64,000 bases of DNA. Origin: Octopus bimaculoides (Eukaryota). Below are positions 33,861-57,731 of this stretch, one piece after another. The position numbers and the translations under genes are program-made. Every line of letters begins with the position of its first letter. Position 1 is the stretch's first letter. The stretch lies in the NCBI RefSeq assembly GCF_001194135.2, contig NC_069008.1:12751279-12815278 (forward strand), written 5' to 3'. The notes below the pieces were generated by a model. That model saw only the letters and a list, made by a program, of their open reading frames with translations, was not told the DNA's origin and did no database searches.

Positions 33861-34737
33861 AGAGAAACCACAATCAAGATATCAGTGCAATATCTGTAAA
33901 ACGTTTTTCACTTACAAACATAGTTTAACTACACACAAACGTATACATACAGGAGAGAAGCCATTTCACTGTGATATCTGTGGTGAATCATTCTCTGTTC
34001 GAAGTGACTTAACTAATCACGAACGTATTCATTCTGGAAAGAGGCTATTTCACTGTGATATCTGTGGTAAATTATGCTCTTGTGGGAGTGCCTTAATATC
34101 TCACAAGCGTATTCATACAGGAGAGAAACCATTTCACTGTGATATCTGTGGTAAATCGTTTCTTTTCAAAAGTTCTGTAGCTCCTCACAAGCGTATTCAT
34201 ACTGGAGAGAAGCCATTTCAATGTGATATCTGTGGTAAATCATTCACTGTTGGAAGTGCCTTAATAACTCACAAGCGTATTCATACAGGAGAGAAACCGT
34301 TTCACTGTGATATCTGTGGTGAATCATTCTCTCGAAGTAGGAATTTAACTGATCACAAGCGTATTCATACTGGGGAGAAGCCATTTCACTGTGATATCTG
34401 TGGTAACTCATTCTATCGAAATAGGACTTTAACTGATCACAAGCGTATTCATACAGGAGAGAAACCATATCAGTGTGATATCTGTGGTAAATCATTCTCT
34501 CAAAGTAGGACTTTAACTGATCACAAACGTATTCACACAGGAGAGAAACCATATCAGTGTGATATCTGTGGTAAATCATTCTCTCAAAGTAATGTTTTAA
34601 CCAAACACAAACGTATTCATACTGGGGATAAACCATATCAGTGTGGTATCTGTGGTAAATCATTCTCTGTAAAAAGTAAATTAATTATGCACAAACGTGT
34701 TCCCACAGGGGAGAATCTTTATGATTGTGCTATCTAG
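33861..34737 (+). CDS. ZNF4: C2H2 zinc-finger protein, 9 fingers + 1 degenerate (family B); 5' end hidden in gap
   Basis: [25 protein letters not shown]..; start codon expected ~33853 by alignment to ZNF6; last finger H->P (HKRVP). Confidence 0.88.
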
Positions 34738-35094
34738 GGTAAATCATTCTCTTGAAACTGTCTCTCAAATAGACATGTATGTGTACAAAAGTGTGACTAT
34801 ATTGTCAGAGATCATTGCATCTCATAACAACCAACGTTTTCAGATCTGTTTCTCTGATAAATCAGGAAATGGCAGTGTGATTTTTAACAGTAATCCATAA
34901 ACTCTTCACTATAATCATACTCATTGTTCTATCTTTGAGGTTGTATTTTATTCCATATTCTTTGTAGCACTTTTAGAAACCTCTTACAACATACAAGGAA
35001 TGTGGTATTCTATCTGTATCTAGTTTTAAAATAAAACTGCATAGAAATACTCTGTCAAAATTGATTCTAAAAATACTTATTAAATGTAACTAAA

Positions 35095-35402
35095 GTGGAG
35101 GCACATGGCCTAGTGGTTAGAGCAGCGAACTTGCGGTCAAGGGATCGCAGGTTCGAATCTCAGACCAGGTGATGCGTGTGTTTATGAGCGAAACACCTAA
35201 ATTCTAAGCGGCTCTGGCAGAAGGTAATGGTGATCTTCTGCTGTCTCTTTCGCCACAACTTTCCCTCATTCTTTCCTCCTGCATCTAGCAGCTCACCTGC
35301 GACAAACCGCGTCCCATCCAGGTGGGAAACCTATTCGCAAATGAAACCGGGAAACCAATCCTTATGAGCTGAGCATGGCTCAAGAAGGAACAAACAACAA
35401 CA
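35095..35402 (+). mobile_element. Full-length tRNA-derived SINE, (CAA)n tail, TSD AATGTAAC
   Basis: A/B boxes tggcctagtgg, ggttcgaatc; empty site in ZNF6 paralog at ~57780-57800. Confidence 0.8.
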
Positions 35403-35774
35403 ATGTAACCATAAATAAAATTATATAACCACAAATGTATTCACACATAACAGAAAATCTAACAGAATGTCAGAACAACCACCCAACGATATATCTTATA
35501 TTTGGAGGTATCCTCCATGTTACAGCCACCTCAAATTTTGCCCTAATGGTAATTTTAAAGTATGACCACTAATTTTGGGATAGGAACTGTAAATTTGCTC
35601 TTAAGGAAACTCATTGCGTAGTTTAAAACTGCACTTTTCGCATAGCTCAGTGGCCACTTGCACTTTAGTTAAAATCAGCGTATAATAGCTAGGAATTTGA
35701 AAAACTAATATTATATTAACACACACATATGCATAGGTATATATAATGAACATAAAATGAGTGTGTGTGTGTGT

Positions 35775-36600
35775 ATCATCATCATCGTTTAACGTCCGCT
35801 TTCCATGCTGGCATGGGTTGGACGGTTTGACTGGGGACTAGTGAGCCAGATGGCTGCACCAGGCTCCAATCTGATCTGGTAGCATTTCTACAGCTGGATG
35901 CCCTTCCTAACGCCAACCACTCCGAGAGTGTAGTGGGTCCTTTTACATGCCACCGGCATGAGGGCCAGTCAGGTGGTACTGGCAAAGGCCATGCTCAAAT
36001 GGTGTTTTCCATGTACCATCAGCACAAGTGGCAGTAAGGCGACGCTGGTAACGATCACGCTCGAATGGTATTTTTTACGTGCCACGCAGCAGCTCTGGTC
36101 ATGATCACGCTCGGATGGTGCTCTTAGCACTCCACTAGCACGGATGCCAGTCATGCGGTGCTGTCATCGAATTCGATTCCGATTTCACTTGCCTCAACAG
36201 GTCTTCACAAGCATAGTTTAGTGTCCAATGAAAGAAAGGTATGCCTAAATGGGCTGGTTACACCACCGGCATAGGCCACAAGTTATGGTCTCACTTGGCC
36301 TGGCCACAGGTTATGGTCTCACTTGGTCTGCTGGGTCTTCTCAAGCACAGCATATTTCCAAAGGTCTCAGTCACTAGTCATTGCCTCAGTGAGGCCTAAT
36401 GTTCGAAGGTCATGCTTCACCACCTCATCCCAGGTCTTCCTGGGTCTACCTCTTCCACAGTTTCCCTCGACTGCTAGGGTGTGACACTTTTTCACACAGC
36501 TACTATCATCCATTTGCACCACAACCATACCAGTGCAGTCGTCTCTCACACATCTGAGGCTTCTTAGATCCAACTTTTCTCTCAAGGCACTTATACTCTG
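35775..36600 (-). mobile_element. 5'-truncated RTE LINE (ORF end + repeat-rich 3' UTR + (GAT)n)
   Basis: MDDSSCVKKCHTLAVEGNCGRGRPRKTWDEVVKHDLRTLGLTEAMTSD. Confidence 0.85.
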
Positions 36601-38079
36601 TCTACATCATCATTTAATGTCCATTATCCCTGCTGGCATAGGTTGGATGGCTTGGCCTAACCTGGCAAGCTGGTGAGTTACACCAGACTCCAGTGTGATT
36701 TGGCATGGTTTCTACAGCTGGGTGCTTCTATGTGACACAGCATGCATGCATTTATGTGACACCACACACAACATGGGCGCTTTTCTGTGGTACTGCCATA
36801 AATGCTTTACACCACCAGAATGATCGGTCTTAACAATTCTGTGGATTACTGTATGGCAAGATCCATGAACTGAATGGCCTAACCACTAATCCATGCACCT
36901 TCACAATAGTTTGAAATAGATAAGTGAATATGTTTCAAATAAAAGCATATAATGTGGTGTCCTAATGTATTTTGAAAGTTGAATGAAATGTCTTTGATGT
37001 TAGGTCTATGGGGATTGATTTAGATTGATGAGATAGCCACAATAATATAATTTGCAACAACAATATGACCACCACACCTGCCCACCATCACATGTAGACT
37101 AATGTAACCGACATCATTGACGCAACAACTTTTGAGTTCAACTGAATATCAGACTGTATGCCAAGATGTGTGTGTATGTGTATTTGTTTTAAATCAGAAG
37201 TGCAAGGGTTGAATTGCCTATAAAATCTGGTAACCCCGCATATAGTATTTTCTCTTCCTGAGTCATCTTATTTCTATTATTACTTCCGTAGAAATAAGAA
37301 AATGTTTTACTCCCACATAGTAAATCTTTTCAAATTTTTTTTACTATATATTTGATTTGGATAATCAATTGCCACTGCTATTGGATCTTCTTTCAATATG
37401 AAATATTTGGAAAGGAGCTATCAAGTAGGCCTGAAGGTAGTAATGCGGGAAGGAACTGGAAAGCGATTACACTGGTTATTAAACTTGATGTTTCTAAAAA
37501 GATTTGGAGCAGAAGTAAAACTCAGTTTGGCAAAACATTATATTTTGAAATGTCACACCAGGATTGATATTTGACTACTGAGTGAATACTATGCTGAAGA
37601 AGCTCCTCCATTAATTGTGAGAGCTTATTTTTCCATACATGTAATCAGCATCGTTTAACGTCCGCCTTCCATGCTAGCATTGGTGGGTGCTTAAAACACA
37701 CGAGTATATGGATGGAGGATCAGAATTGGTGTAATGTGCCTATAAACAAGTAATTCAAAAGAGCCAAAAGTTTATATGATGATTTACTGTAAGAGGAAGG
37801 TGAAACTTGTAATGAAAACCCTTTTGTGTCTCATAAAAGCTGATTTGAAAGAAATATAATATGAGAAGAATCTAAGATGGTGAGCTGGCAGAATTGCTCA
37901 TGCCCTGAGCAAAATGCTTAGTAGCATTTCATCTGTCCTTATGTTCTGAGTTCAAATTCTACTGTGGTCAACTTTACCTTTCATCCTTTTGGGGTCCATA
38001 AAATAAGTACCAGTCAAGCACTGGGAATTGATGAAATCCCCAGAAATTATTGGCTTTGCATCAAAATTTGAAACTAATT

Positions 38080-38660
38080 TGCAGAGAACCTTTATGGCAT
38101 ATTATAAGAGAACTTTCAAAGTCTATATATGAAAAGAACTTTCAAACAACATATGAAAGCAATTGACAGGGAGGAGAAACCTACAATTAGAGATTTCTGG
38201 AGGAAGTTCAACATAATGGATGCTTTGGGTAATATAGCGGGATGATGTGAAACCTTCAACTTTGAATAGTTCTTGGAACAGTATATAGCCAGACTGTATC
38301 TGTGACATTACAAGTTTTCCTCAAGCAGAAAGTCTACATGGAATTGGGAAGGATATTGTGACACTTGCAAAGGATGTAGGATTTGATGTGATTGGGTTAC
38401 CAGTGTTTCAAAGAGAAAGTTTATCCATTGAAGAGGTGATACTCTTAGAGAAAGAAATGAATATACAGATGACACGACAGAAGTCCTAATGACAGTTAAA
38501 TTCACTAAAAATATTATTGTTGAAGGGTTGGCACGTATAGAGGAATGTTTGCAGGTTTATGCTGACAATTTGTGAACCTTTGACATAAATCATATTCATG
38601 GTTCTTTGTTTGAACAATTGTTTTATAGCCAGATTCTCTGTTTGTAGCCTTTTATAACAT
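38080..38660 (+). mobile_element. Tigger/pogo transposase C-terminal remnant (paralog 45960-46550)
   Basis: KRTFKQHMKAIDREEKPTIRDFWRKFNIMDA..VKPSTLNSSW..PDCICD..IVTLAKDVGF. Confidence 0.7.
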
Positions 38661-39559
38661 ACAAGGATTTGGTACATCCCCCCTGTGTTCAGTGGCTAGA
38701 CCTCAAAAGGTCTGGAACGGAAAAACATCGAGATGGTGTGAAGCTAGAGTTTTATAGTGAGCAGTCAGCTCACACTGAGGTTTAGAAGAGACTGTCTCAC
38801 GTGACCTTATTTGAAGGCTGCAACTGGTTGGGTTGCATATTGGTGCACAATAGAGCAAGAGACAAATTGCCCCAATACCAACCAATCAGAGTAGTGGACA
38901 CAACAGGGTCCAAAAGGGCGGCCGAAGACTAGCTGTTATCTACTACGTCCGTATTTATGTATATGTAACAGAGAGAGAGGAATTTCCCTCAAGCGTACGC
39001 TACACATGCAAAAAAAAAAAAAAATACATAACACACAGCCTCACTCTCTTTCTCCTCTCACTTCAAATCAAACGTCGCCTTCAAAACGTCATGAAAACAA
39101 AAGTAAATAGATAAAAAATCTTCTACGGAAATTAACGAACAATCATATAGTCCCATATGATTGAATTTTGACAGACATGAGGGGTATACCGAAAGAATGC
39201 CGCTTTTCGTACGCTATGCGTAAAAATAACTCCAAACGAGGATGTTTTGAAGTATAGATTATCGTGTGTTAAACATCTAAAGCGTGAGAGAGGATGCAAA
39301 CCACTAACTGAAGCCAGAGTCCCTTTTATTTCGCCCAGTTCGTTAACTGGTTTGCAATAAACGTCCTTGTCTTCAGCTTGTTTCTTGCAAGTTCACGGAC
39401 AATGTCGTACAGGAGTAAACATAAAAAGAAGAATGTTAGTTTGATTTTAATTGAAGTAGAACTGAAATTTGTAATATAAATCTTTAGATATTTACACCTG
39501 TTTATTCGCTTATTTGCTCACGTGCGATTTCAAAGTACCTTTCACTTTCAATTTGTGTT

Positions 39560-39723
39560 TTTAGCAAGTTTCAATTGGCAACCCTCTTTCTCCCTCTACC
39601 GGAGAATTAAAATAATACACATATAAAGGGGAATAACTTCATATTTTGTAAGATATACGTGATTAGGACGATGTCAGTTTAATTGTTGTTAATTGTGCAC
39701 CGACTAATTGCATATGAGGAACG
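39560..39723 (+). promoter_or_regulatory. Family-B promoter cassette / exon 1 (ZNF5)
   Basis: TATAAA 39622-39627, donor at 39723/39724, acceptor TTTCAG at 42248. Confidence 0.6.
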
Positions 39724-40999
39724 GTAAGTTGACAAAGATTTACTTGAATAATAAATCTGTAATAATGTAAGTGAGAGAATTGTTATTCTGTGAATCCTTC
39801 AACGGTACAGCAGCTCTTTTCAAGTGAAAACACACGACAACATTGGGACAAAGATATTTACTCCGCAACTTGAAAGGATAATACTTCCAGGCTGAAATGT
39901 CGATCTGTATTTTTAAAGACACACACTCCATTGTTACATATAAAGCGATATAACGAGATAAATGTTTTGTTAAATTATTTTATATTCCTTAATTCTGGTT
40001 TAAACACCCCATATAAGCTCCCATCACTTTTTTAGTTTTTGGAATTCTTGAAAATTTTTTTGCGAATTTATATTCTCCACATGAGAATTCATACGATTGT
40101 GCTAAAACCAAAGGAAAAAGGGTTGATGGTGCGTGATTTAAAGGCTATCTAGCTGTTATTTTTAGCCCATCTCTCCCTTATACCCTACTTGTTAGTGTTA
40201 TATATTGAGGTTTTTCAATACCCCCCCCCCAATTAAAATTTTTGATTTTATTTGCTTTAAAGAGATCGTAGCGAATTGACGAACATATACAAATCGAAAT
40301 TGAATACATACAAACACATTAAAGTGGAAAGAATTTGCGTTTTACTTGTGTTTGCCTTAATATATTTGTCAACTAAATGTGGCGGTCCTATAGAATTGTC
40401 CCTCATATTGACAAATGACTGAGACCTTTGTCGATATACTGTGCTTGAGCAAACCTGATGAAATTGTAGTCGTAGCTGATGCTGGTTTTACATAACTAGC
40501 ACCGATGCTGGTCGCACGTAAATGTCAACGACTACATACTTGGAGGAATTGATGTTAGGAAGGGCATTCAGCCAGAGAATCCGTGCCAAATCAGATTGGA
40601 ACCCGGTGCAGCTCCCCAGCTTACCAATTTTCAGTCAAACCATCCAATTCTTGCCAACAATTGAAAATGGATATTAAATGATGTGTGGTTGTTAATGTTA
40701 AGTCCTTTCTTTTTTCTTTTGTTGCCGTCCAGGTGCGTGGGGCTCTTGCTATCATATTTCTTTACGTTTTGCGTATGTGTACGCCTGGCATAAGATTCAG
40801 CGTTCTATGGTTTCTGCCATTATCTCCACTATACCTGATATTCCCTCTTGTTTGAATGTTTTTTGCTACTGTATAAACTGTATATTTTTTTGGTTGTATC
40901 CTGTGTATTCACCCCCACCACTTTTCTTGTTGTTTTCTCTATTCTGTTATGGGGGTGCATCTGGTTGTTATGGTTATTTTTTTTTGTGGGCGGGGGAGT

Positions 41000-41265: not shown

Positions 41266-41274
41266 CACTGGGAA

Positions 41275-41701: not shown

Positions 41702-42643
41702 ATATATATATATATATATGTATATGTGTCTGTTTACAGTTTGGCAAAAGAGAATAAGGACTAGGCATACAAAGAATAAATCCTGGGGTTGATTTCTTCA
41801 ACTAAAAGGTGGTGCTCCAGCATGGCCACAGTCAAATGACTGAAACAAGTAAAAAGGAAGAATGAATATATATATATATATATATATATGTAATAATAAA
41901 GGATAAAAATGATCAAAGATTTTATCAGTGGCCAGCATATAATATAGACCTATTAAGGTAAATTCATATATAGAGAATTTATAATAGTATAAAATACAAT
42001 TATAATTAAGGGCATAGAAGAGACCATGACATATATATTTAGACACATACAAGATGATGATGATGATATATTTACATAGACACATTATGAGAAGCATAGC
42101 CTCTAGAATGATGTTGGTATTCCAAACCTGACATAATGTTAGAGTTGGTCTTAGTAACGGTGATGGTTTTAGTTGTAATCCACTGTTTCATCTCTGCTTT
42201 TAAAATGTCCTCTAAATCTTACACTGTTGTTTCTCTCTTTTATTTCAGAATATCAGATGACATTGGCATCACAGTATTGTTTCCATGAATATTTATCACC
42301 TTCTAAAACTGAAAGAAAATATTGTTCAGAATAGATTTTTAATAATCCTAGAGAATTACAGTGAAATATTTCTTCTGAAGTGAGATTGATAGCAACATTT
42401 CTCTTCTTAAATGTTTGGAATGTCTACAGAGTGATTTTATACAGAAATCAAACTTCGGTAATTTTGAAAAGAATCTTACAGCATCTTCAGATATTAACAA
42501 AGATTGCAGCCGAAGGAAAGAGAACAGTAATAAAGGAATAAACTGTGGAATTGAACAGGAAATGCTTTGGCATATATTGTGCTGATAAAAGCAAAATGAG
42601 GATTGTCTGAGAAAGCTGTAGAATATATTTTTATAAAGAGGTG

Positions 42644-43696
42644 ATGTCAAAAGAGAAACCACAATCAAGATATCAGTGTGATATCTGTAAAACGTTTTTC
42701 ACTTACAAACATAGTTTAACTACTCACAAACGTATACATACAGGAGAGAAGCCATTTCACTGTGATATCTGTGGTGAATCATTCCCTGTTCGAAGTGACA
42801 TAACTAAGCACAAACGTATTCATATTAGAGAGAAGCTATTTCACTGTGATATCTGTGGTAAATTATCCTCTTGTGGAAGTGCCTTAATATCTCACAAACG
42901 TATTCATACGGGGGAGAAGCCATTTCACTGTGATATATGTGGGAAATCATTCTCTCAAAGTAGCGTTTTGACTTATCACAAACGTATTCATACAGGAGAG
43001 AAGCCGTTTGATTGTGATATCTGTGGTAAATCATTCTCTGTTGGAAGTGCTTTAATATCTCACAAGCGTATTCATACTGGAGAGAAACCGTTTCACTGTG
43101 ATATCTGTGGTAAATTATTCTCTGTTGGAAGTGGCTTAACATCTCACAAGCGTATTCATACTGGAGAGAAGCCATTTCAGTGTAATATCTGTGGTAAATC
43201 ATTCTCTCAGAGTAGCACTTTAACCAAACATGAACGTATTCATACAGGGGAGAAACCATATCACTGTGATGTCTGTGGTAAATCATTCTCTGAAAATGGC
43301 AAATTAACCATGCACATACGTATTCACACAGGAGAGAAGCCATTTCACTGTGATATTTGTGGTAAATCATTTTCTGCAGGTAGCATATTAATTAAACATC
43401 AACGTATTCATACAGGAGAGAAGCCTTTTCACTGTGATATCTGTGGTAAATCATTCTCTCAAAGTGGCACTTTAACCAAACATGAACGTATTCATACAGG
43501 GGAGAAGCCATATCAGTGTGATATCTGTGGGAAATCATTCTCCGAGAAAGGTAAATTAAGTCTGCACGTACGTATTCACACAGGGGAGAAGCCATTTCAC
43601 TGTGATACCTGTGGTAAATCATTCCCTGCAAAAGGTAAATTAACTATGCACAAACGTATTCACACAGGGAAGAAGCCATATCATTCTGCTGTTTAG
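42644..43696 (+). CDS. ZNF5: C2H2 zinc-finger protein, 350 aa, 12 fingers (family B)
   Basis: Intact [22 protein letters not shown]...KPYHSAV*; ATG at 42644 (track used upstream GTG). Confidence 0.94.
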   Translation: MSKEKPQSRYQCDICKTFFTYKHSLTTHKRIHTGEKPFHCDICGESFPVRSDITKHKRIHIREKLFHCDICGKLSSCGSALISHKRIHTGEKPFHCDICGKSFSQSSVLTYHKRIHTGEKPFDCDICGKSFSVGSALISHKRIHTGEKPFHCDICGKLFSVGSGLTSHKRIHTGEKPFQCNICGKSFSQSSTLTKHERIHTGEKPYHCDVCGKSFSENGKLTMHIRIHTGEKPFHCDICGKSFSAGSILIKHQRIHTGEKPFHCDICGKSFSQSGTLTKHERIHTGEKPYQCDICGKSFSEKGKLSLHVRIHTGEKPFHCDTCGKSFPAKGKLTMHKRIHTGKKPYHSAV

Positions 43697-46946: not shown

Positions 46947-47794
46947 TTGGGTCATCCCATAAATAATGCGTTTTTTTTTAATATTTATTTTTCAAAATTA
47001 AGATAAAGTTCTTTTTAATCTAAAACATACTCTCCTTCATTTTCTTCAATGCTCTGCCATCTAGCTGGTATATTTGCAATGCCCCTCTTCTAAAATCCAC
47101 TTGTGTGTGACGAAAAATACTCTTCTAGTACTGTTCTGACCTCATCTACAGAATTCATATTTTTCCTGTCCAAGTGATTTTGAAGTCTGCAAAATAAATG
47201 ATAATCAGATTGGGCAAACTGCTCCAGCTGTCGGAATGTTATCGCTGCATGTGGCAAGCATTATCCTGATGGTAGACCATCTTTCGTCTTGAAACCAAAG
47301 ATGGTCATTTTCTGATGTTATGCAGGTGTTGATGAAGTGTTGAATGACCAAATCCAAGCTTCTCTGCTGTCTTCTCAATAGTTACAATGGGATTTTGTTC
47401 CACCAGGGTTTGCAGGACCTCCTCATCGAGCTCTACAGATCTTCCAGGATGAGGCTCGTCTTCTAGGCTGTAGTATCCGGCTCGGAATTTCTGGAACCAC
47501 CGTTGACACTGGCTTATGCTTATTTTCCAATCCCCATATGCTGCATTAGTATTCCTTGCATTTTCCGTTGTGTTGTTGCCTTTATTGAACTCATAAATCA
47601 AAATATGCTGAATATGCTCCTTTGTCACTTCCACAATAGCTTTGAAAAAATAACTGTTAAAATCAAAGTGGACTCTTCCAAACTTGCACTGAGAATGAAA
47701 ACAAGGTAAAATTACATCCTGTTCCCTTCCAACTTCCCCTCTGACTTTTAGTTCATACAATTGAAAAAACCGTGTTATTTATGGGATGACCCAA
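46947..47794 (-). mobile_element. Internally deleted mariner transposon (848 bp)
   Basis: TIRs TTGGGTCATCCCATAAATAA.., TA TSDs; EVTKEHIQHILIYEFNKG..CQRWFQKFRAG..GRSVELDEEVL, HQDNA, SDYHLF motifs. Confidence 0.9.
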
Positions 47795-48619
47795 TAATTT
47801 ATGTTGTATTGTTTCAGCAAGTAATGTTTTGATGAGGTAAGAGAGTGAAGATAATCTTAAAATAAAAACTACTGTAGTAGTGCAGGTTACTTCTATTGTA
47901 CTGCACTTAACTGTGCAGGCTAAGCCTCGCCAATGTTTGAACGAATTTGTAATGGCCATGCCAGCCTGGAAGCAATAAATTATGTTGAAATTTGTCTTAA
48001 GATAGATGAGGCTTAGCCCATACAGTCAAGTACTCTATGCTACATGTGTCCTACAACACTATGATGGTTTTTATTTTGACATTATATACATATATTCATG
48101 CATGTGTCTGTGTTATATACATGTATGTCTGTATCTTCTTGTCTTGATATCACATGATTGTTGCATATGAATGTCATTAGGATTGCAAATTATATGAGTA
48201 AATATGGTATTGTGTGGGGTGGGGGCATGGATTGTGTTTAAGCATTGATTAATCCTGGATGAACAAACTTGCAATATAAAACGGGTTGATTACAGGGACT
48301 TTTATGACCTTTCAAATGGAAATAAAGATTGTATTGAACCAAGGAAAGATGTTTAAATAACAAAGAAAATTTACAAAATACCTTGTACATGTGGCTTCTA
48401 ACTACAGTTTGGTACCCCCACCACTGATTTTCATTTTATTTCACAATGACATCTCCTAGCATACACTAAACAGGTTTCCTTGTTTTACTTAGAAATCCAT
48501 CCACATTCTCTGGCCAGTACTTGTGGAAGGGTTGATGTGGGTAGGGACCTGAGATACCTCATTACAAGGGTACAATCAGAGACAATGATCATTTCAGTCT
48601 CCAGTTGGAATCTGAAGTA

Positions 48620-48900
48620 TAAGCAACTGAAATAATGACTATTATCCAATCATCTATTTCTTGGTCTATCCCTAGGACTGCCTTTTAGTTAGGCTTGAAG
48701 AATCTGCCTTGTGAGTCTTTTATGCAACTTTCTAACCACAAGTCTAAAATACAGGAGTTGTAATCTCTCAATGTAGAAAGAGTCCTTGATCTCCACAGTA
48801 GAGATCTTTTGGTGGAACCACATTTGGCCACTTGTATTCTTGATCATACTCTTTCAAACATCACCTAACCTTTCTTCTGCGAATTGAATGCTTGATGTGG
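48620..48900 (-). mobile_element. Old RTE ORF C-terminal fragment (different subfamily)
   Basis: IERLQLLYFRLVVRK..RLTRQILQA*LKGSPRDRPRNR*LD. Confidence 0.5.
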
Positions 48901-49707
48901 CTCATTACTGTACCAGCACCTATAATTCTTTGAGTAGGAAAATAAGGGAAAAGAAAATACATGTATCATAAATGCTTTGACAGAGTTTTTTCTAGATCTA
49001 AAATATTAAGGAATGAAAATAAATGGAATGTAGGAGTACTATTTCCCTTTGGCAGAACAGTTATCCATCTATGCATGATTTAGTTAGTGTAGCCAACTAC
49101 TTTAACTTGTGCATAAACACATGCTGCTGCCTATCACCAGACATGGGGAAGTTTTTTAGTCAGTTCTAGTCAGGCTTCCACTGAAGCAAGATGTATCATC
49201 ATGTCGCTGTCTGAACCCAACACCATGTGGAAAATATCTAATAGAGAAACATTCAGCACCTCACCTTGCACACCCAATCTCCAATGCACAGCTTTCACTG
49301 GGGGAGATTGCAAGAAATACTGCAATCGGTGTTGTTTTACAGTGCTTTCAGTTTTCAGTTTTTTTTTCACTTTTAATTAGTTCTTCCAGAACATTATGGA
49401 ATACAGCTTTTGTTATGCTAAACATAAAAATAACCGCAAACAAGGATGTTTTGAAGTGTTGAATATTTTGTGTTAAATAATTTGCAACGTATGAGAGGAT
49501 ACAAACCACAATTAAAGCTAGTCTCTTTTCTGTCGACCACTTCATTATCTACTTTGCAAGTCCTCGTCTACAGTTTGTCTCTTGCAAGTTCACCGAAAAG
49601 AAGAATGTTAATTAGATTTTATTGTTGTATTTCGGGACGGCCTTTTTTTTTTTTGCCAAATAAACACATGCACTATATATTTTTTCACTTGTTTATTACT
49701 CTCGTTC

Positions 49708-50071
49708 TCTCTTTTACTTGTTTCAGTCATTTGACTGCGGCCATGCTGGAGCACCGCCTTTAGTCGAACAAATCGACCCCAGGACTTATTCTTTGTAAGA
49801 ACCGCTAAATTACGGGGACGTAAACGCACCAGCATCTGTTGTCAAGCGATGTTGGGGGGGACAAACACAAACATATGCACACACACACATATATATATAC
49901 ATATATACGACAGGCTTCTTTCAGTTTCCATCTACCAAATCCACTCACAAAGCTTTGGTCGGCCCTGGGCTATAGTAGAAGACACTTACCCAAGGTGCCA
50001 CGCAGTGGGGACTGAACCCAGAACCATGTGGTCGGTAAGCAAGCTACTTACCACACAGCCACTCCTGCGCC
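49708..50071 (-). mobile_element. Full-length abundant octopus tRNA-derived SINE (another at 54547-55090 across gap; tail at 41725-41860)
   Basis: ggcgcaggagtggctgtgtggtaagtagc..gggttcagtccc..microsatellite..gactgaaacaagtaaaag. Confidence 0.85.
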
Positions 50072-50544
50072 TACTGTTCTTATTTTTAAAAACTTTAACC
50101 TATGTCCATTGTCTGGAAATCTTTCGTCACACATCTGTGACCTCTTCAGCAACACTTTCGTTTTCGTGTGTGTTCTGCTCAAGTGGAGCAAAAACTAACA
50201 TGAAAATGAAAAGTGTCGCTGAAGTGGTCGCAGATATGTTACGAAAGATTTCAGGACCAGGGACATGAGTTAAAATAATAGAATAAGAACAGTAATAAAC
50301 GAGTGAAGAAAAAATATATAGTGCGTGTGTTTATTTGGCAAAAAAAATTACCGTCCCGAAATACAATACCGGTTTCTACACACGATTTCACATCAGGAAT
50401 CTTGCAACACAAATTCATAACCGTAAATTTGATTTTAATTAAACCGAAATTTTTTTTAATAAATTTTTTTGATATTTACATCTGTTTATTCGATTTTTTT
50501 GCTCCGGTGTTATTTTAAAGTATTTTTCCCTTTTAATTTGTGCT

Positions 50545-50693
50545 TTTTAGCAAGTTTCAATTGGCAACTCTCTCCTTCTACCGGAGAATTTAAGAAATAC
50601 ACAGCATATAAAGGGGGACAACTTCATACTTTGTCCCACGAAGAGGTCGATTTAATTGTTAATTGTGCACTGACTAATTGCATGTGAAGAACG
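50545..50693 (+). promoter_or_regulatory. Family-B promoter cassette / exon 1 (ZNF6)
   Basis: TATAAA 50607-50612, donor at 50693/50694, acceptor TTTCAG at 56295. Confidence 0.6.
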
Positions 50694-51084
50694 GTAAGTT
50701 GACAAAGATTTCCTTGAATAATAAATCTGTAATAATGTGTGTAAGTGAGAGAATTGTTATTCTTCAACGGTACAGCAACTCTTTACAAGTGAAAACACCT
50801 AACAATGTTAGGACAAAGATATTTGCTCCCGAAAGTCGTCGTTTTGCTGTACAGGATAATACTTCCAGACTGAAATGTCGATCTGTTATTTGTAAATAGA
50901 TTCACTATGTGAAGTGATAGAAGGAGATAAATGTTTTGATCAAATATTTTGCAATCAATCGCTTTGAGTTTCTGAGTTGTCACTAACAACTTGTCAGTTA
51001 CCCTGTTTTAAACTATGATAAAAAAACAACAACAACAACAACAAAAATTACATTTTTTCGTAGCCTTGTGAATTCCTGATTGTA

Positions 51085-51296
51085 CAGGGTGTCCACAAAG
51101 TCTGGGTATATGGAGTAAATAAAATCGTAGCATAAACAATTAAAAATAAGAAATAATAATTTCTTAAAGTATGTGTTAATTCCCACATGAGTACACGGAG
51201 TAAATAAAATCATAACATAAACAGTTAAATATAAGAAATAATAGTTTCTTAAAGTATATGTTAATCCATATGTACCCAGATTTTGTGGACACCCTG
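51085..51296. mobile_element. Tc1/mariner-type MITE
   Basis: TIR CAGGGTGTCCACAAA.TCTGGGTA, TA TSDs, internal ~95-bp direct duplication. Confidence 0.85.
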
Positions 51297-51959
51297 TAGA
51301 ATACAAATTCGTTAGAATTTTCAGAAAATTCCAAAAATATAAACTATGAGAGTTTATATGCTGAGCTTAATGCAGATTTCCTAGGAATTTTAAAATAAAT
51401 ATCGTGCACGAGTATGATTTTGTTGTGCAACGATTATGATCAACTTATTAAATGGTTTAAAAGATTTATAATTCTAGCTTAACTTTGTGCGTGTGATTTT
51501 GGCCATAATTGTTGATCTGTAAAATTTATCTCTAATCGCAAGCTGGCTGCTCTATTACTTTGAACTTTCCATCAGCTTCTATCACACGTTGCTCAGCACG
51601 ACTATAATTACCATCATCTCGGACAAATGCCGCACTTCAGTTCTCAACGAAAGAATACCTGAAAAACATTTGAATTGACATACAGTTTACAGTCCCAAAA
51701 TAGTGGAAATAAATTGTTTAGAATATGAAAGTGAATTGCGATAGAAAGTAAAAGTGACGACATTGAGATCCCGTAATTTGTGACTTTTATATAATGTTGA
51801 CACATGGTATATTCGGTATGTGATGTGCCAGCGTATCCAATACATAAATGTGTGTGTACGTATGGCTGTGTGAAAAGAAGCTTGCTTCCCAACCAGGTGG
51901 ATCTGGGTTCTGTCCCACTGCTTGGGCAGCTGTCTTCTTCCATAGACTGAGAAGTTATT

Positions 51960-52560
51960 TTGCATCTATTCACTAGTTTCTTTGTCAAATATCTAGAGTT
52001 TAAGGTGCATACTTTATTCCTAGCACAATTACAGAGACCGTGTACCCTGTTCCTATTATTTATTGCGTTATAGTTCCTGCTACATGACTCTGCTGCGCTT
52101 GTTTCTAACAATCTGCCGTATTTTGTAAGCTTTCAATCCATAGGTGTTTGTGGTCTGCTATTTCTAGCGATTCACACTTCCTGTCTTCCCTCATTTGCTG
52201 GCTCTTAGTTTATTACCCCCCACCCCCACCCCGTAGTGTGTGTTATATTGGTATTAGCATTCGAGTCCCTTCTGTTATTAACTATTCTTGTCCTGTCAGC
52301 TAGTTTAATATTATCAATATTGCCGTCAATGAGTTCATTTTTCTGGTCTATTCTAGATTCATTAGTCTTTCGGAAGTGAGATGTAGTCTTCTTGCGTTGC
52401 GTGTCCCTATTATCTGCACTAGTGGAAAAAGTGAGCTGGACATTGCGGGTATTTGGTATTTGGTAGACTTGAAAAAGTGTTTCTCGATCGTAGTGTAGGA
52501 CTGCTTCAGAATGTTGGAAACTATTTGTCCCCCAAATCCAACATTGTACCATAGTCCTTG
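51960..52560 (-). mobile_element. Penelope-like linker/GIY-YIG N-terminal remnant
   Basis: WYNVGFGGQIVSNILKQSYTTIEKHFFKS, NTRNVQLTFS, CNCARNKVCTLNSRYLTKKLVN (CNC..CPL.G.CL motif decayed). Confidence 0.55.
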
Positions 52561-54010
52561 AATTCCTATTACTATGTATTGTGTACAATATGTTGTACTT
52601 GAGAAGACTCATCAAGTCAAGTGAAATTGTAGTCGTGGCTGATACCTGGGTTGCATAACTTTCACCTGTGCCATAAAAAGCACCCTTTGAATATTGGGTG
52701 ATATGCCGTACTTGAGAGGACCCTATTACTTTGGGCATTATTATGTATTGTGTACAATATGCTGTGTATGAGAAGACCTGTAAAGCGAAGGGAAATCGTA
52801 GTTGTGGTTGATTCCAGTGTTGTGTAACTTACATGTAAAAAGCACCCTTCAAATGTTGGGCCTCACAGAGGCAGTGAGAAATGACTGAGACCTTTGTTGA
52901 CATACTGTGCTAGAGAAGACCTTTCAAGCCAGGTGAAATCGTAATCGTGGCTGATACCAGTGTTACATAAGTGGCACCCATGCTGATGGCACGTAAATAT
53001 CACCCACTATACTCTTGGAGTGGTTGATGTTAGGAAGGGTATCTCGCTGTAAAAGCCATACCAAATCAAATTGGAACCTGGTGCAGCTTACCAGTTTTCA
53101 GTCAATCTTTCCAACCCATGCCAGCATGGAAAACGGACGTTAAATGATGTTCATGATGTATGGTTGTTAATGTTAGAGCCTTTCTTTTTTCGGTGGTGGC
53201 TGTGTGGGTATGTGGGGCTCTTGCTATCATATTTCTTTGTTTTGTGCATGTGTACACCTAGGATAGCTTACTTCACTTCTAAGGTTTAGTGTTCTATGAT
53301 TTGTGCGATTATTTCCACTTGGTAGTTGCACCTGATATTACCTCTCGTTATAATAAATAAATAAGTTACAGTAACTTATATGTTGTAGTAAAAGCAACAT
53401 GTTCTTTGTCTATCTCCTTAACTTCTTGGAGACTTTAGGTATAATTATACTAATGTGTCCATCTGTTCTAATTTAATTAAATTCTATGTCTTTGTGCAGC
53501 TGAGGATTGCTCTGCATTTTAAATTGATGTAATGATTGCATTGTTCAATTAAATGGAGTTGCATGAAACGATCGTACTGCATTACCTCTAGATATCCTTG
53601 TTGCTTATTTTGTTGCGAAGACTTATTGGGGCAAGCGAAAGCAAAATCGGGATGGCACCTGTGCCCAGCGTCGCCTTTCTGGCACTTGTGCCCGTGACAT
53701 GTGCAAGGATTTTCAAGCGAGATCATTGCCAGTGCCCCTGGACTGGCTCTTGTGCAGGTGGCACATAAAATACACCATTTTGAGCGTGGTCGTTGCCAGT
53801 ACTGCCTGACTGGCCTTTGTGCCGGTGGCACGTAAAAACACCCACTACACTCTCGGAGTGGTTGGCGTTAGGAAGGGCATCCAGCTGTAGAAATGCTGCC
53901 AAATCAGATTGGAGTCTAGTGTAGCCATCTAGTTTCACCAGTCCTCAGTCAAATCGTCCAACCCGTGCTAGCATGGAGAGCGGACGTTAAACGACGGATG
54001 ATGATGATGA
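52560..54010 (+). mobile_element. Cluster of RTE 3' UTR fragments (52560-53160, 53630-54010)
   Basis: Tandem 3' UTR sub-repeats, gggcatccagctgtagaaa, (GAT)n tails. Confidence 0.75.
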
Positions 54011-55087
54011 CGATATATATATATATATACACACAAAGATATATATACTATTTGTCTTTCTGTCTTCTTCCCTGCTTTCCACGGCACTTCTTCATTCCTG
54101 TATTCTGATGGAAGAAAGAAACCTGAATGACTCTTTCCCTTCTACTGTTCAAGCAGGAAAACTTGTCCCTCTGGTCATGTTTTTGAATCTTTTCTTTTTT
54201 TCATTATTCTCATTCATTACATGTTTCTCTCTCACTCTGTCTCTCTATGTATGCTATCAATCAGTTTCATTTCTCTATTTCTTCTCCATAGAGAAAGAGC
54301 CGGACTCTAACATAGATTCAAGGCTCCTTCATTGGAACTTTTATCAACGTCATCTAGGTATTTGTGCATATGTGTGTGTGTGCAGTATTTGGTGTTAGTG
54401 TATGCGCAGATTTGTATGTTTGTTTTATGGATGCGTTTTTATGTCTAGATGCATGCATATGTATTTATGTGCTAAATTTTTGGAAAGTTTTACATATCTT
54501 TACAGTTCCATTGATGGCTTGAATCTGTAATGTATGTATGTATATACTCTTTTACTTGTTTCAGTCATTTGACTGCGNNNNNNNNNNNNNNNNNNNNNNN
54601 NNNNNNNNNNNNNNNNNNNNNNNNNNNNNNNNNNNNNNNNNNNNNNNNNNNNNNNNNNNNNNNNNNNNNNNNNNNNNNNNNNNNNNNNNNNNNNNNNNNN
54701 NNNNNNNNNNNNNNNNNNNNNNNNNNNNNNNNNNNNNNNNNNNNNNNNNNNNNNNNNNNNNNNNNNNNNNNNNNNNNNNNNNNNNNNNNNNNNNNNNNNN
54801 CTCTTTTGCCGAACCGCTAAGTTATGGGGACGTAAGCACACCGGCATTTGTTGTCAAGCGATGTTGGGGGGACAAACACAGACACACAAACATATACACA
54901 CACATTCATATATATATACATATATACGATGGGCTTCTTTCAGTTTCCGTCTACCAAATCCACTCACAAGGCTTTGGTCGGCCCAAGGCTATACTAGAAG
55001 ACACTTGCCCAAGGTGCCACGCAGTGGGACTGAACCCATAACCATGTGGTTGATAAGCAAGCTACTTACCACACAGCCACTCCTGCG

Positions 55088-55146
<59 letters not shown>

Positions 55147-55199
55147 AAGCATATATATATGTAAACATATACATATACGTGTGTGCACATACATAGGTG

Positions 55200-55985
55200 T
55201 ATATCATCATCATCATCTGTTTTCCATGCTGGCATGGGTTGGACGGTTTGACTGAGGTCTGGAGAGCCAGATGGCTGCACCAGGCTCCAATCTGATCTAG
55301 CAATGTTTCTACAGCTGGATGCTCTTCCTAACATCAACCACTCCACGAGTGTAGTGGGTGTTTTTTACGTGCCACTAGCACAGGCCAGTCAGGCAGACCT
55401 GGCACTGGCCACACCTATGATTGCATCGGCCATGGCTGTGATCTCACTTTAGTTGCTTGGTCTTCTCAATCCAAAGGTCTCGGTCTCCTGTCATTGCTTC
55501 TATGAGGCCTAACGTTCGAAGGTCATGCTTTACCACCTCATCCCATGTCTTCCTGGGTCTACCTCTTCCACAGTTAGGGTGTGGCACTTCCTCACACAGC
55601 TGTCCTCATCCATACGTAACACATGACTATACCAGCACAGTTGTCTCTCTTGTACACTACATTTGCTGCTTCTTATGTTCAACTTTTCTTTCAGGGTGCT
55701 TGCACTCTGTCGTGTATGCACACTGACATTACACACCCAGCGGATCATACTAGCTTCATTTCTTTCAAGCCTACACATGATCTCAAGAGTGTTGGCTCAT
55801 GCTAATTAAAAAGCACCCAGAACACTGGGTTGACATTAAGAAAGGTATCTATCTGTTAAAACCATGGCAGAGCAGACAGTAGAGCAGGGTGCAGTTCTCT
55901 GGCTTGCCAGCTTCTGTCAAATTACCCAACCCATACTAGCATGGATAACAGACTTAAATATTGATGGTGATGATGATGATGTCAT
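55200..55985. mobile_element. RTE 3' end on - (55200-55790) abutting RTE tail on + (55800-55985)
   Basis: RLERNEASMIRWVCNV..LCWYSHVLRMDEDSCVRKC on minus strand. Confidence 0.8.
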
Positions 55986-56702
55986 AGTCGAAGGGAAAAG
56001 GGGTAATGTCTATGATCTATTTTAGGGTCTCAAAAACTAGATGGTAGTGGTGGTGTGGAGGGAAAGTTTCAGATAGGAGACATCGCCTGGATTCTTGCAA
56101 TGAGGTGGATACTACTAAAGATGCCCAAAGCACCAGCGGTGGTGGGGGAGGGGTGTTAAACTGAGTGAGGGATTATGTTTGATACCAATAAAGCAATCCC
56201 AGATATACTATGGCTGAAAATAAGAGAGAGAGAGAGAGAAGTAAAAAAAAAATGTCCTCTATATCTTACACTGTCATTTCTCTCTTTTATTTCAGATGAT
56301 CGGACGACATTAGCATCATGGCATTGCTTCCATCATCAGTATTTATCACCTTTTAAAACTGAAAGAAAATATTGTACAGAAAAGATTTCATAACTGTAGA
56401 GAATTACAGTAAAATATTTCTTCTGAACTGAGATTGATAGCAACGTTTCTCTCCTTAAATATTTGGAATGTCTACAATGTGATATTGTACACCAATTAAA
56501 CTTGGATAATTTTATAAAGAATCCTACAGCATCTTCAGATATTACCAGAGATTGCAGTTGATGGAAATAGAGTTGTAAAATTATTTGTTAGCAATAAACT
56601 TTTGAATGAAAATAGGAAATGTATCCATGTGATGATAAAAGTAAAATAATGGACAAATGGATTGTGTGAGAAAACTGAAAAATATATTGTTATTGCAAAG
56701 AG

Positions 56703-57596
56703 ATGTCGAAAGAGAAACCACAATCAAGATATCAGTGCAATATCTGTAAAACGTTTTTCACTTACAAACATAGTTTAACTACACACAAACGTATACATAC
56801 AGGAGAGAAGCCATTTCACTGTGATATCTGTGGTGAATCATTCTCTGTTCGAATTGATTTGACTAAACACAAACGTATTCATTCTGGAAAGAGGCTATTT
56901 CACTGTGATATCTGTGGTAAATTATGCTCTTGTGGGAGTGCCTTAATATCTCACAAACGTATTCATACGGGGGAGAAGCCAGTTTACTGTGATATCTGTG
57001 GTAAATCATTCTCTCAAAGTAGCTGTTTAACTTATCACAAACGTATTCATACAGGAGAGAAGCCATTTGATTGTGATATCTGCGGTAAATCATTTCCTGC
57101 TGGAAGTTCTTTAACATCTCACAAGCGTATTCATACAGGAGAGAAACCATTTCACTGTGATATCTGTGGTAAATCATTCTCTTTTCGAAGTGCCTTAGTA
57201 TCTCACAAGCGTATTCATACTGGAGAGAGGCCATTTCACTGTGATATCTGTGGTAAATCGTTCTCTGAAAGAAGGAATTTAACTAATCACAAACGTATTC
57301 ATACTGGAGAGAAGCCATTTAATTGTGATATCTGTGGTAAATCATTCTCTCGAAGTAGCAATTTAACTGTCCACAAGCGTATTCATACTGGGGAGAAGCC
57401 ATTTCACTGTGATATTTGTGGTAAACCATTCTGTCAAATTGGGAATTTAACTGATCACAAGCGTACTCACACAGGAGAGAAGCCATTTGAATGCGATATC
57501 TGTAGTAAATCATTCTCTCTTCATAGCACTTTAACCAAACATAAATGTATTCACACAGGGAAGCAGCCATTTCACTGTGATTTCTATGGTAAATGA
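56703..57596 (+). CDS. ZNF6: C2H2 zinc-finger protein, 297 aa, 10 fingers (family B), followed by decayed fingers to ~57770
   Basis: ORF ends FHCDFYGK*; downstream finger-like sequence contains TGA, a 6-nt deletion and TAA. Confidence 0.88.

Positions 57597-57605: not shown

Positions 57606-57731
<126 letters not shown>

What the first reader, a model, noticed from the sequence alone, without database searches (positions are those of the whole stretch)
33861..57000. Constant + variable architecture: three invariant N-terminal fingers in KRAB-less family-B ZNFs
Seen: ZNF4, 5 and 6 begin with (M)SKEKPQSR, finger 1 YKHS (identical helix), finger 2 VRSD/VRID and finger 3 CGSA, then diverge completely in helix residues and number (9, 12, 10 fingers). 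The constant part is atypical for DNA binding: finger 1 has KTFF instead of GKSF, linker 2-3 is SGKRL/IREKL instead of TGEKP, and finger 3 lacks the conserved Phe (GKLCSC/GKLSSC). ZNF4 and ZNF6 are nearly identical in DNA over these fingers. Known: vertebrate KRAB and insect ZAD ZNFs pair a constant effector with a variable array; cephalopod ZNF expansions have no recognised effector. Inference: the first fingers may be the cofactor-recruiting or dimerisation module, with variable fingers targeting TEs. Gene conversion or recent duplication is the alternative.
Basis: partly seen in the sequence, partly recalled or inferred. Interest (0 to 1): 0.72.

Follow-up and report, generated by a model that had tools for sequence, protein, structure and literature searches.

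The report
Young tandem octopus zinc-finger gene triplet
Three neighbouring octopus zinc-finger genes are recent copies of one gene that keep two of their first three fingers unchanged under selection while the later fingers are reshuffled, which is a known way for such gene families to evolve and gives no evidence of a new effector module.

Summary
The window is Octopus bimaculoides chromosome CM046628.1, about 12.75-12.82 Mb. ZNF4, ZNF5 and ZNF6 are real: three same-strand, single-ORF C2H2 genes with 9, 12 and 10 intact fingers. The flagged gap (54578-54800) is intergenic and touches no ORF. The gap that matters is 33314-33860, which hides ZNF4's start.

- Fingers 1 and 3 are nearly invariant, with dN 0-0.015 and dS 0.10-0.25. 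Flank divergence is 0.13-0.18. This indicates purifying selection.
- Finger 2 and its odd linker differ at 3-8 residues and have dN about equal to dS.
- Divergence after finger 3 is not complete. ZNF5 and ZNF6 stay colinear through finger 6 at 90-92% DNA identity. Finger 5 is shared by all three genes. ZNF4 and ZNF5 share their last fingers and 3' flank.
- A significant mosaic signal shows that ZNF6 resembles ZNF4 up to mid-finger 3 and ZNF5 afterwards, indicating exchange between copies or finger replacement.

Best reading: young tandem paralogues with anchored array ends, a shuffled interior and diversifying recognition helices. No feature points to an effector or dimerisation domain, but that function was not testable here. 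Whether the module occurs outside this triplet also could not be tested. In passing: many other octopus ZNFs carry an intact 35-residue acidic leader that is decayed in the window's genes.

The parts
33861..34737 (+). ZNF4 ORF, 5' end unread because gap 33314-33860 abuts it. It has 9 intact fingers. Finger 10 has lost its last His (HKRVP). Finger units: F1 33880-33963, F2 33964-34047, F3 34048-34131.
42644..43696 (+). ZNF5 ORF, 350 aa, 12 fingers. F1 42671-42754, F2 42755-42838, F3 42839-42922. The stop lies at the second-Cys position of a degenerate 13th finger; ZNF4's stop lies at the corresponding position of its 11th finger.
56703..57596 (+). ZNF6 ORF, 297 aa, 10 fingers. F1 56730-56813, F2 56814-56897, F3 56898-56981.
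57597..57770 (+). Decayed fingers 11-12 of ZNF6 after the stop ([19 protein letters not shown], then a shortened finger). This indicates a recent C-terminal truncation.
42249..42643 (+). Non-coding block upstream of ZNF5. It is homologous to the blocks upstream of ZNF6, ZNF1 and ZNF2. It starts after a pyrimidine tract plus cag (42246-42248), has stops in all three frames, and contains the decayed remnant of the acidic leader.
56296..56702 (+). The same upstream block for ZNF6 (cag 56293-56295). JC divergence from the ZNF5 block is 0.169.
33314..33860 (.). Assembly gap that hides the start codon and upstream region of ZNF4.
54578..54800 (.). Assembly gap in intergenic repeats between ZNF5 and ZNF6. 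It is not in any gene.
34738..40852 (+). Downstream part of the ZNF4 duplication unit. It is largely colinear, in blocks, with 43697-53349 downstream of ZNF5 (one short segment, 35026-35501, is out of order). JC divergence is 0.13-0.18.
57760..58942 (+). ZNF6 downstream flank, homologous to 46575-46943 and 47800-48603 downstream of ZNF5 (K 0.16-0.18).

Best explanation
ZNF4, ZNF5 and ZNF6 are three young tandem copies of one effector-less C2H2 zinc-finger gene in an Octopus bimaculoides ZNF cluster. Neutral divergence between them is about 0.13-0.18 substitutions per site.

The shared N-terminus has four contributing causes:
1. Common descent.
2. Position at the edge of an 84-bp repeat array. 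Finger 1 is only 62-73% identical to any other finger, so it cannot mispair in unequal exchange.
3. Purifying selection on fingers 1 and 3.
4. At least one exchange between copies, covering leader to mid-finger 3 and joining ZNF4 with ZNF6.

Finger 2 and its non-canonical linker drift at about the neutral rate. Downstream the arrays change by finger duplication and loss and by rapid amino-acid replacement in the recognition helices. The last fingers stay anchored.

Inferred, not shown: the proteins act as ordinary sequence-specific nucleic-acid binders. In that reading finger 1 (with finger 3) gives a common subfamily-specific contact or spacer rather than a separate effector domain.
For: - Source and gene calls.
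- Tandem units with largely colinear flanks, K 0.13-0.18.
- Per-finger identity falls gradually. F1-3 are 87-100%. ZNF5/6 F4-6 are 90-92%. ZNF4/5 F5 is 93%. Later fingers are at the background of 79 +/- 6%.
- F1+F3 have 2 nonsynonymous against 7 synonymous differences (ZNF4/5, P = 0.0003) and 0 against 4 (ZNF4/6, P = 0.0014). F2 has 9 against 0, 3 against 2 and 8.5 against 2.5.
- ZNF5/6 F4-6 helices have 10 nonsynonymous against 1 synonymous difference. Their framework has 5 against 7.
- Mosaic switch inside finger 3, p < 5e-5, and a 143-nt identical ZNF4/ZNF6 run.
- Lineage-specific finger duplications: ZNF4 F6-F8 are 88-90% alike, ZNF5 F7/F10 are 94% alike, and F3 is 86-90% like F5/F6.
- Both ends are anchored in family B and in family A (ZNF1/ZNF2).
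- Only C2H2 Pfam families match.
- Six ordinary fingers are modelled, with no extra structural element.
- Published precedents: polarised variability of PRDM9 arrays with ends more stable than the centre (PMC3890296), and finger gain and loss as a common route of ZNF divergence (PMC3126818).
Against: - The helices of fingers 1 and 3 show zero amino-acid changes over a tree on which about 5-8 would be expected neutrally. The constraint on them is therefore stronger than on the other helices and needs a specific function that I cannot name.
- Finger 3 lacks the core Phe and has small residues (C, S, A, S) at the DNA-contact positions. Finger 1 has Y, H, S, T. Neither looks like a strong base reader, which fits a non-DNA role as well as it fits an anchor role.
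- All counts rest on only about 50 synonymous sites and three sequences.
- The mosaic could partly reflect lineage-specific acceleration (ZNF5 finger 2) and finger replacement (ZNF4 fingers 4 and 6) rather than conversion.
- Expression is unknown.
Confidence: 0.6

Rival explanations
1. Fingers 1-3 are a constant protein-interaction module (cofactor recruitment or dimerisation) that replaces a KRAB/ZAD-type effector. The variable fingers target DNA such as transposons.
For: - Purifying selection with normal dS on fingers 1 and 3, and frozen helices, against diversifying helices in fingers 4-6.
- A non-canonical finger 2-3 linker and a finger 3 without the core Phe.
- Weak base-contact residues in fingers 1 and 3.
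- The ancestral acidic leader is lost in these genes, so another constant part could have taken over.
- C2H2 fingers are known to mediate dimerisation in other proteins (PMC12774644).
Against: - Finger 2, the middle of the supposed module, evolves at dN about equal to dS, and its linker differs between copies.
- The Phe-position residue of finger 3 itself varies between Cys and Ser.
- Finger 3 is a close copy of fingers 5/6.
- Finger 1 is a complete canonical finger joined by TGEKP to finger 2.
- The fingers are clustered, not isolated, and no extra strand is modelled. Known dimerising single fingers need such an element and are mostly isolated (PMC12774644).
- The cassette was seen only in these three young copies, in all sequence I could reach.
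Confidence: 0.13
2. Concerted evolution only. The N-terminal similarity is kept by repeated gene conversion among the three copies, with no selection specific to these fingers.
For: - Mosaic signal with a breakpoint inside finger 3.
- A 143-nt identical ZNF4/ZNF6 tract, where about 4 synonymous differences are expected.
- dS of leader plus F1-3 (0.11-0.14) is slightly below the flank K (0.13-0.18).
Against: - dS is not suppressed for ZNF5 against the others in fingers 1 and 3 (0.10-0.25), while dN is near zero. Conversion would lower both.
- Synonymous differences sit inside the frozen helices: 2 of 9 sites in two of the three pairs.
- Finger 2 accumulates replacements inside the same tract.
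Confidence: 0.12
3. Decaying duplicates. The three ORFs are non-functional or dying copies, and the similarity is simply youth.
For: - ZNF6 is truncated by stops inside still recognisable fingers. ZNF4 finger 10 has lost a zinc ligand. The ancestral leader is broken by stops.
- The neighbouring ZNF3 is a clear pseudogene.
- No transcript evidence is available.
Against: - All four zinc ligands are intact in every one of the 31 strict fingers counted inside the ORFs; only the degenerate 10th repeat of ZNF4 has lost one. My estimate from K/2 of about 0.08 per lineage and about 10.7 nonsynonymous ligand sites per finger is that only about 13 would stay intact under neutrality.
- Framework dN/dS is about 0.16, and F1+F3 dN/dS is 0-0.15.
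Confidence: 0.1

Closest known systems
KRAB-, ZAD-, SCAN- and FiNZ-type poly-zinc-finger families (constant N-terminal effector plus variable array)
   Same: - Tandem gene clusters.
- The whole array lies in one exon.
- Finger number varies between close paralogues.
- Fast change occurs at the recognition-helix positions.
   Different: - There is no non-finger domain here. The protein starts 9 residues before finger 1, and the upstream frame is closed by stops.
- The 'constant' part is itself made of fingers, and one of the three is not constant.
- Other octopus ZNFs do carry a short acidic leader, loosely reminiscent of the 28-residue Glu-rich FiNZ (PMC10547256). In the window's genes that leader is decayed.
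PRDM9-type coding-minisatellite finger arrays with polarised variability
   Same: - 84-bp repeats.
- Repeat gain and loss.
- Non-synonymous change concentrated in the helix.
- Array ends carry stable signatures while the centre turns over (PMC3890296).
   Different: - These are paralogous genes, not alleles of one gene.
- There are no KRAB, SSXRD or SET domains.
- Divergence is far older than allelic variation.
Dedicated protein-interaction zinc fingers (Ikaros-family C-terminal finger pair; dipteran CGx-Phi single fingers, PMC12774644)
   Same: Some fingers are conserved in sequence while others specify DNA. Non-canonical features are present (odd linker, missing core Phe).
   Different: - Those fingers are set apart from the DNA-binding cluster or isolated, and the dipteran type needs an extra N-terminal beta-strand with the CGx-Phi motif.
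- Here the fingers are contiguous with the array. Finger 1 has a canonical TGEKP linker, and no extra element is predicted.
Effector-less 'array-only' duplicates of ZNF genes in mammalian clusters (PMC3126818)
   Same: - Local duplicates consist only of the finger exon.
- There are frequent finger indels.
- Intact and decaying copies occur side by side.
   Different: Here the lost part is a short leader inside the same exon rather than a separate effector exon. The copies still show purifying selection.

Membership tests
Effector-plus-array ZNF families (KRAB/ZAD/SCAN/BTB/FiNZ type) | A conserved non-finger domain N-terminal to the array | tested here: not met
   - Pfam matches only C2H2 families.
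- There are 9 residues before finger 1.
- In-frame stops lie 10-13 codons upstream of the ATG, and all frames of the upstream block are closed.
Effector-plus-array ZNF families (KRAB/ZAD/SCAN/BTB/FiNZ type) | The constant part is shared by many genes with unrelated arrays, beyond one local duplication | tested here: inconclusive
   The cassette was found only in ZNF4-6. It is absent from 391 retrieved proteins, from about 4 kb beyond each window end, and from about 125 kb (non-redundant) of other octopus ZNF loci. The tools cannot scan a whole octopus genome, and the window's own proteins are missing from the protein collection.
Effector-plus-array ZNF families (KRAB/ZAD/SCAN/BTB/FiNZ type) | The constant part recruits a cofactor or represses when tethered | not testable with these tools
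   This needs an experiment.
Protein-interaction or dimerisation zinc fingers (Ikaros type, CGx-Phi type) | The finger or fingers are set apart from the DNA-binding cluster, or isolated | tested here: not met
   Fingers 1-3 are contiguous with the array at 28-residue spacing, and the F1-F2 linker is TGEKP.
Protein-interaction or dimerisation zinc fingers (Ikaros type, CGx-Phi type) | An extra secondary-structure element (beta-strand with CGx-Phi) precedes the finger core | tested here: not met
   The AlphaFold2 model has residues 1-6 below pLDDT 50 and no strand before finger 1. The leader MSKEKPQSR has no such motif.
Protein-interaction or dimerisation zinc fingers (Ikaros type, CGx-Phi type) | Self-association or partner binding | not testable with these tools
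   No multimer prediction or assay is available here.
Krueppel-type tandem C2H2 DNA-binding array | C-x2-C-x12-H-x3-H with conserved Phe and Leu core | tested here: met
   Met by fingers 1 and 2 and by all later intact fingers. Finger 3 keeps the four ligands and Leu but has Cys or Ser for Phe.
Krueppel-type tandem C2H2 DNA-binding array | TGEKP-type linkers between successive fingers | tested here: met
   Met for F1-F2, for F3-F4 and for nearly all later linkers. The F2-F3 linker is the clear exception (SGKRL or IREKL).
Minisatellite-like finger-array evolution with polarised variability | Finger copy-number change and intra-array duplication between close relatives | tested here: met
   - 9, 12 and 10 fingers.
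- ZNF4 F6-F8 are 88-90% alike and ZNF5 F7/F10 are 94% alike.
Minisatellite-like finger-array evolution with polarised variability | Array ends more stable than the centre | tested here: met
   - The N-terminal fingers are colinear in all three genes.
- ZNF4 F10-11 match ZNF5 F12-13, and the 3' flank is shared.
- The same pattern holds for ZNF1/ZNF2.
Minisatellite-like finger-array evolution with polarised variability | Excess non-synonymous change at helix positions | tested here: inconclusive
   ZNF5/6 F4-6 helix has 10 nonsynonymous against 1 synonymous difference (dN 0.246, dS 0.068). The framework has dN 0.034 and dS 0.216. The direction is clear, but the counts are too small for a formal test.
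Gene conversion between paralogues | Mosaic relatedness along the alignment | tested here: met
   Maximum-descent permutation p < 5e-5. Longest concordant runs give p = 0.0015 (ZNF4=ZNF6) and p = 0.012 (ZNF5=ZNF6). Finger replacement and rate differences could contribute.
Gene conversion between paralogues | Synonymous divergence suppressed together with non-synonymous divergence | tested here: not met
   dS for F1+F3 is 0.10-0.25, against flank K of 0.13-0.18. Suppression is seen only locally, in ZNF4/ZNF6 from leader to early F2.

The most novel reading that the evidence does not exclude
Octopus ZNFs may have two kinds of constant part. Many genes in O. bimaculoides and O. sinensis carry an intact 35-residue acidic leader (ME.EL...), which I did not find described in the papers I read. 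This subfamily has lost the leader and may instead have fixed finger 1 (with finger 3) as a finger-based interaction or dimerisation module in front of a diversifying array.
Probability: 0.1. Interest if true: 0.6.

Novelty: new member of a known kind. Interest (0 to 1): 0.27.

Why it matters
Cephalopod C2H2 expansions are large, and no effector is described for them in the papers read here (PMC12513265, PMC10547256). A real constant module would therefore give a handle on how these proteins act.

The present data reduce the claim to a familiar pattern. These are recent tandem copies with anchored array ends, a shuffled interior and diversifying helices. Two fingers are held by selection for a function that remains unknown.

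The more useful lead for the effector question may be the short acidic N-terminal leader. It is intact in many other octopus ZNFs and decayed in the window's genes.

Tried and rejected
- **Protein search with the 93-residue N-terminus.** It returned only generic C2H2 hits at 65% identity or less, all short proteins.
- **Exhaustive representative search with the same query.** The ranking is by summed score, so giant poly-finger proteins fill the top 150.
- **Search with leader plus finger 1.** A 50-residue query gave a single irrelevant candidate.
- **Profile of the first six fingers.** It returned generic hits only.
- **Exact look-up of the window's proteins.** They are not in that collection, so the absence of relatives there says nothing.
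- **Sampling other octopus ZNF loci through retrieved proteins.** No further copy of the cassette was found, but this covers about 125 kb (non-redundant) of gigabase-scale genomes.
- **Extending the window by about 4 kb each way.** No further fingers were found.
- **Albertin et al. 2015.** The paper is not held in the library.
- **Rejected: haplotig or assembly duplication.** The copies differ by about 15%.
- **Rejected: an upstream coding exon supplying an effector through the conserved acceptor.** All frames between that site and the ATG contain stops. An unseen acceptor close to the ATG cannot be excluded without RNA data.

Full report
**Source and gaps**

The ZNF6, ZNF5 and ZNF1 products are called genes on Octopus bimaculoides GCA_001194135.2, chromosome CM046628.1. 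This places the window at about 12,751,279-12,815,278.

The window has five gaps. The flagged gap at 54578-54800 lies in intergenic, repeat-rich sequence. It is 1.9 kb upstream of the ZNF6 ATG and about 11 kb downstream of the ZNF5 stop. No finger ORF crosses it.

The gap that does matter is 33314-33860. ZNF4 becomes readable at 33861, inside the Lys codon before EKPQSR. Its start codon and upstream region are therefore unknown.

**What is there**

A six-frame scan finds six finger arrays.
- Family A: ZNF1 (+, 5284-6654), ZNF2 (-, 16832-17944) and the pseudogene ZNF3 (+, about 24784-25182).
- Family B: ZNF4 (33861-34737), ZNF5 (42644-43696) and ZNF6 (56703-57596), all on the + strand, with 9, 12 and 10 strict fingers.

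Pfam sees only C2H2 families.

**Gene structure**

About 400-450 nt upstream of the ATG is homologous between ZNF5 and ZNF6 (JC K = 0.169), and also with ZNF1 and ZNF2. The homology begins at a pyrimidine tract plus cag (42246-42248 and 56293-56295). I read this as a probable 3' splice site; that is inference.

All three frames of this block contain stops. In-frame stops lie 10-13 codons before the ATG. The proteins therefore start 9 residues before finger 1.

**Age and neutral baseline**

The duplication units are largely colinear well beyond the ORFs.
- ZNF4 34738-40852 corresponds, in blocks, to ZNF5 43697-53349; one short segment (35026-35501) is out of order.
- ZNF5 46575-48603 corresponds to ZNF6 57760-58942.
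- JC divergence across these flanks is 0.13-0.18.

These are paralogues, not haplotigs.

**Is the N-terminus constant and the rest variable?**

Per-finger DNA identity against a background among canonical fingers of 79 +/- 6%, 95th percentile 89%:

| Finger(s) | Comparison | DNA identity |
|---|---|---|
| F1 | all pairs | 96-100% |
| F2 | all pairs | 87-94% |
| F3 | all pairs | 93-98% |
| F4-6 | ZNF5/ZNF6 | 90-92% |
| F5 | ZNF4/ZNF5 | 93% |
| ZNF4 F6 vs ZNF6 F7/F8 | ZNF4/ZNF6 | 90-93% |
| ZNF4 F10-11 vs ZNF5 F12-13 | ZNF4/ZNF5 | 83% and 70%, each the best match |

ZNF4 and ZNF5 also share their 3' flank. The pattern is a gradient with both ends anchored, not a step after finger 3. Family A (ZNF1/ZNF2) shows the same layout.

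Inside the genes:
- Finger 1 is the outlier, at 62-73% identity to every other finger.
- Finger 3 is 86-90% identical to fingers 5/6 of the same gene.
- ZNF4 F6-F8 (88-90%) and ZNF5 F7/F10 (94%) are lineage-specific finger duplications.

**Selection versus conversion**

Nei-Gojobori counts:

| Region | dN | dS | Note |
|---|---|---|---|
| F1+F3 | 0-0.015 | 0.10-0.25 | 2 N vs 7 S (ZNF4/5, P = 0.0003); 0 N vs 4 S (ZNF4/6, P = 0.0014); no helix replacement in any pair |
| F2 with linker | 0.05-0.15 | 0-0.16 | 3-8 residue differences |
| ZNF5/6 F4-6 helix | 0.246 | 0.068 | 10 N vs 1 S |
| ZNF5/6 F4-6 framework | 0.034 | 0.216 | 5 N vs 7 S |

For F1+F3, dS is in the range of flank divergence, so wholesale conversion does not explain their constancy.

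There is nevertheless a strong mosaic signal. Up to mid-finger 3, ZNF6 agrees with ZNF4. That stretch includes a 143-nt identical run where I expect about 4 synonymous differences. From mid-finger 3 on, ZNF6 agrees with ZNF5.
- Maximum-descent permutation: p < 5e-5.
- Longest concordant runs: p = 0.0015 (ZNF4=ZNF6) and p = 0.012 (ZNF5=ZNF6).

At least one exchange between copies, or finger replacement combined with lineage-specific acceleration, has occurred. All of this rests on about 50 synonymous sites and three sequences.

**Are they alive?**

Every one of the 31 strict fingers counted inside the ORFs has all four zinc ligands; the exception is the degenerate 10th repeat of ZNF4, whose last His is now Pro. 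From K/2 of about 0.08 per lineage and about 10.7 nonsynonymous ligand sites per finger, I estimate that only about 13 would remain intact under neutrality. This is my own calculation. It indicates that the arrays have been under selection for most of their history.

ZNF6 is cut short by stops inside recognisable fingers 11-12. This suggests recent erosion at its 3' end.

**Does anything point to an effector or dimerisation role?**

- Finger 1 fits the full canonical pattern and is joined to finger 2 by TGEKP.
- AlphaFold2 (three-row alignment, mean pLDDT 75) models six beta-beta-alpha fingers.
- Residues 1-6 are disordered, and there is no extra strand.
- The lowest finger confidence (66-68) is at the F2-F3 linker and the finger 3 hairpin.

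Published dimerising single fingers need an extra N-terminal strand and are mostly isolated. Clustered fingers are the DNA-binding type (PMC12774644).

The middle finger of the proposed module is the least constrained part. On the other side, the contact residues of fingers 1 and 3 (Y/H/S/T and C/S/A/S) are poor base readers, and their helices are frozen. A non-DNA role therefore cannot be excluded.

**Distribution**

I could not scan an octopus genome. The protein searches were swamped by generic fingers, and the window's own proteins are not in that collection.

No second occurrence of KTFFTYKHS or [CS]SCGS was found in any sequence I could reach:
- 391 retrieved proteins;
- about 4 kb beyond each window end;
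- about 125 kb (non-redundant) of other O. bimaculoides and O. sinensis ZNF loci.

**A side observation that bears on the premise**

At least six of the sampled ZNF genes in O. bimaculoides (CM046628.1, CM046629.1) and O. sinensis start with an intact acidic leader. It is 35 residues long, always the same length, and ends at finger 1. Examples are MEKELCEDSVEYKMQLKRVNFPDDSKKGKDKTSYFC and MENELYRSEVECKRESEEIDFSNEEKNEKGKISYDC.

The window's genes carry the same stretch as a decayed remnant. In ZNF1 the ATG is now AGT and a TTA is now TAA. ZNF5 and ZNF6 have in-frame stops. All of them start at an internal Met (M[NS]KEK). The leader has no Pfam match.

The comparison with the 28-residue, Glu-rich FiNZ (PMC10547256) is only a resemblance.

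**Comparison and verdict**

The closest known behaviour is polarised variability of coding-minisatellite finger arrays (PRDM9, PMC3890296), together with finger gain and loss in clustered ZNF paralogues (PMC3126818). Defining features of effector-plus-array families and of dedicated interaction fingers were tested where possible and not met.

I file this as a new member of a known kind, of modest interest. A 10% reading remains open in which finger 1 (with finger 3) is a real finger-based constant module.

Noticed in passing
L002 10001-10105 (+); L008 about 2982-3087 (-) and 10001-10105 (+); L003 about 24814-24919 (-); L009 about 6254-6359 (-) and about 18830-18934 (+). Remnants in the window at about 5200-5283, 42560-42643 and 56620-56702.: Many octopus ZNF genes in two species begin with an intact acidic leader of 35 residues before the first Cys of finger 1 (ME.EL...(I/V)(D/N)F(P/S)..K..K(T/I).Y.C). 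It has no Pfam match. In all the window's ZNF genes examined it is broken (lost ATG, stops), and translation must start at an internal Met. It is a candidate family-wide constant part, and I did not find it described in the papers read.
   Followed up: partly
window 4834-5283, 17945-18447 (-), 42202-42643, 56249-56702: All intact ZNF genes of both families share a homologous, stop-filled block of about 400-450 nt upstream of the ATG. The block begins at a pyrimidine tract plus cag with a CTTAC-like branch site. This suggests that the finger exon is a 3' exon preceded by non-coding 5' exon(s).
   Followed up: partly
window 24784-25182 (+), next to gap 25483-25672: ZNF3 is a family-A pseudogene. 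It has stops inside fingers, and only four fingers fit the C2H2 pattern (one of them contains a stop).
   Followed up: no
window 47305-47760 (-): An ORF with a Mos1-type transposase HTH domain (PF17906, E = 5e-17). This mariner-like remnant lies inside the enlarged ZNF5-ZNF6 spacer.
   Followed up: partly
window 2573-2812, 10509-10762, 11434-11683, 15392-15636, 32542-32758, 32940-33135, 35775-36065, 40506-40683, 52981-53158, 53760-54053, 55197-55412, 55809-55981: At least 12 copies of a short interspersed repeat of about 190-290 bp (70-93% identity), in both orientations. Several copies lie within about 200 bp of assembly gaps.
   Followed up: no
window 7404-8057 (+): A 217-residue ORF with a YIDD-type reverse-transcriptase-like motif but no Pfam hit at E <= 0.01. 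It is probably a retroelement fragment.
   Followed up: no
window 34244-34663, 42825-43370, 56863-57234, 57319-57732 (all -): Long antisense ORFs run across the finger arrays (repeating [10 protein letters not shown]... units). They are a by-product of the 84-bp repeat composition, not genes.
   Followed up: no
L003 and L004 (O. sinensis CM016885.1, 10,051,814-10,079,777 and 10,407,928-10,435,891): Two 28-kb ZNF loci lie 356 kb apart with the same finger lists and a 9-nt offset. This is either a very recent large segmental duplication or an assembly duplication.
   Followed up: no
window 34306-34557 (ZNF4 F6-F8) and 43175-43258 / 43427-43510 (ZNF5 F7 and F10): Lineage-specific finger duplications inside the arrays (88-94% identical units, helices RSRNLTD/RNRTLTD/QSRTLTD and QSSTLTK/QSGTLTK). 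They account for part of the different finger numbers.
   Followed up: yes
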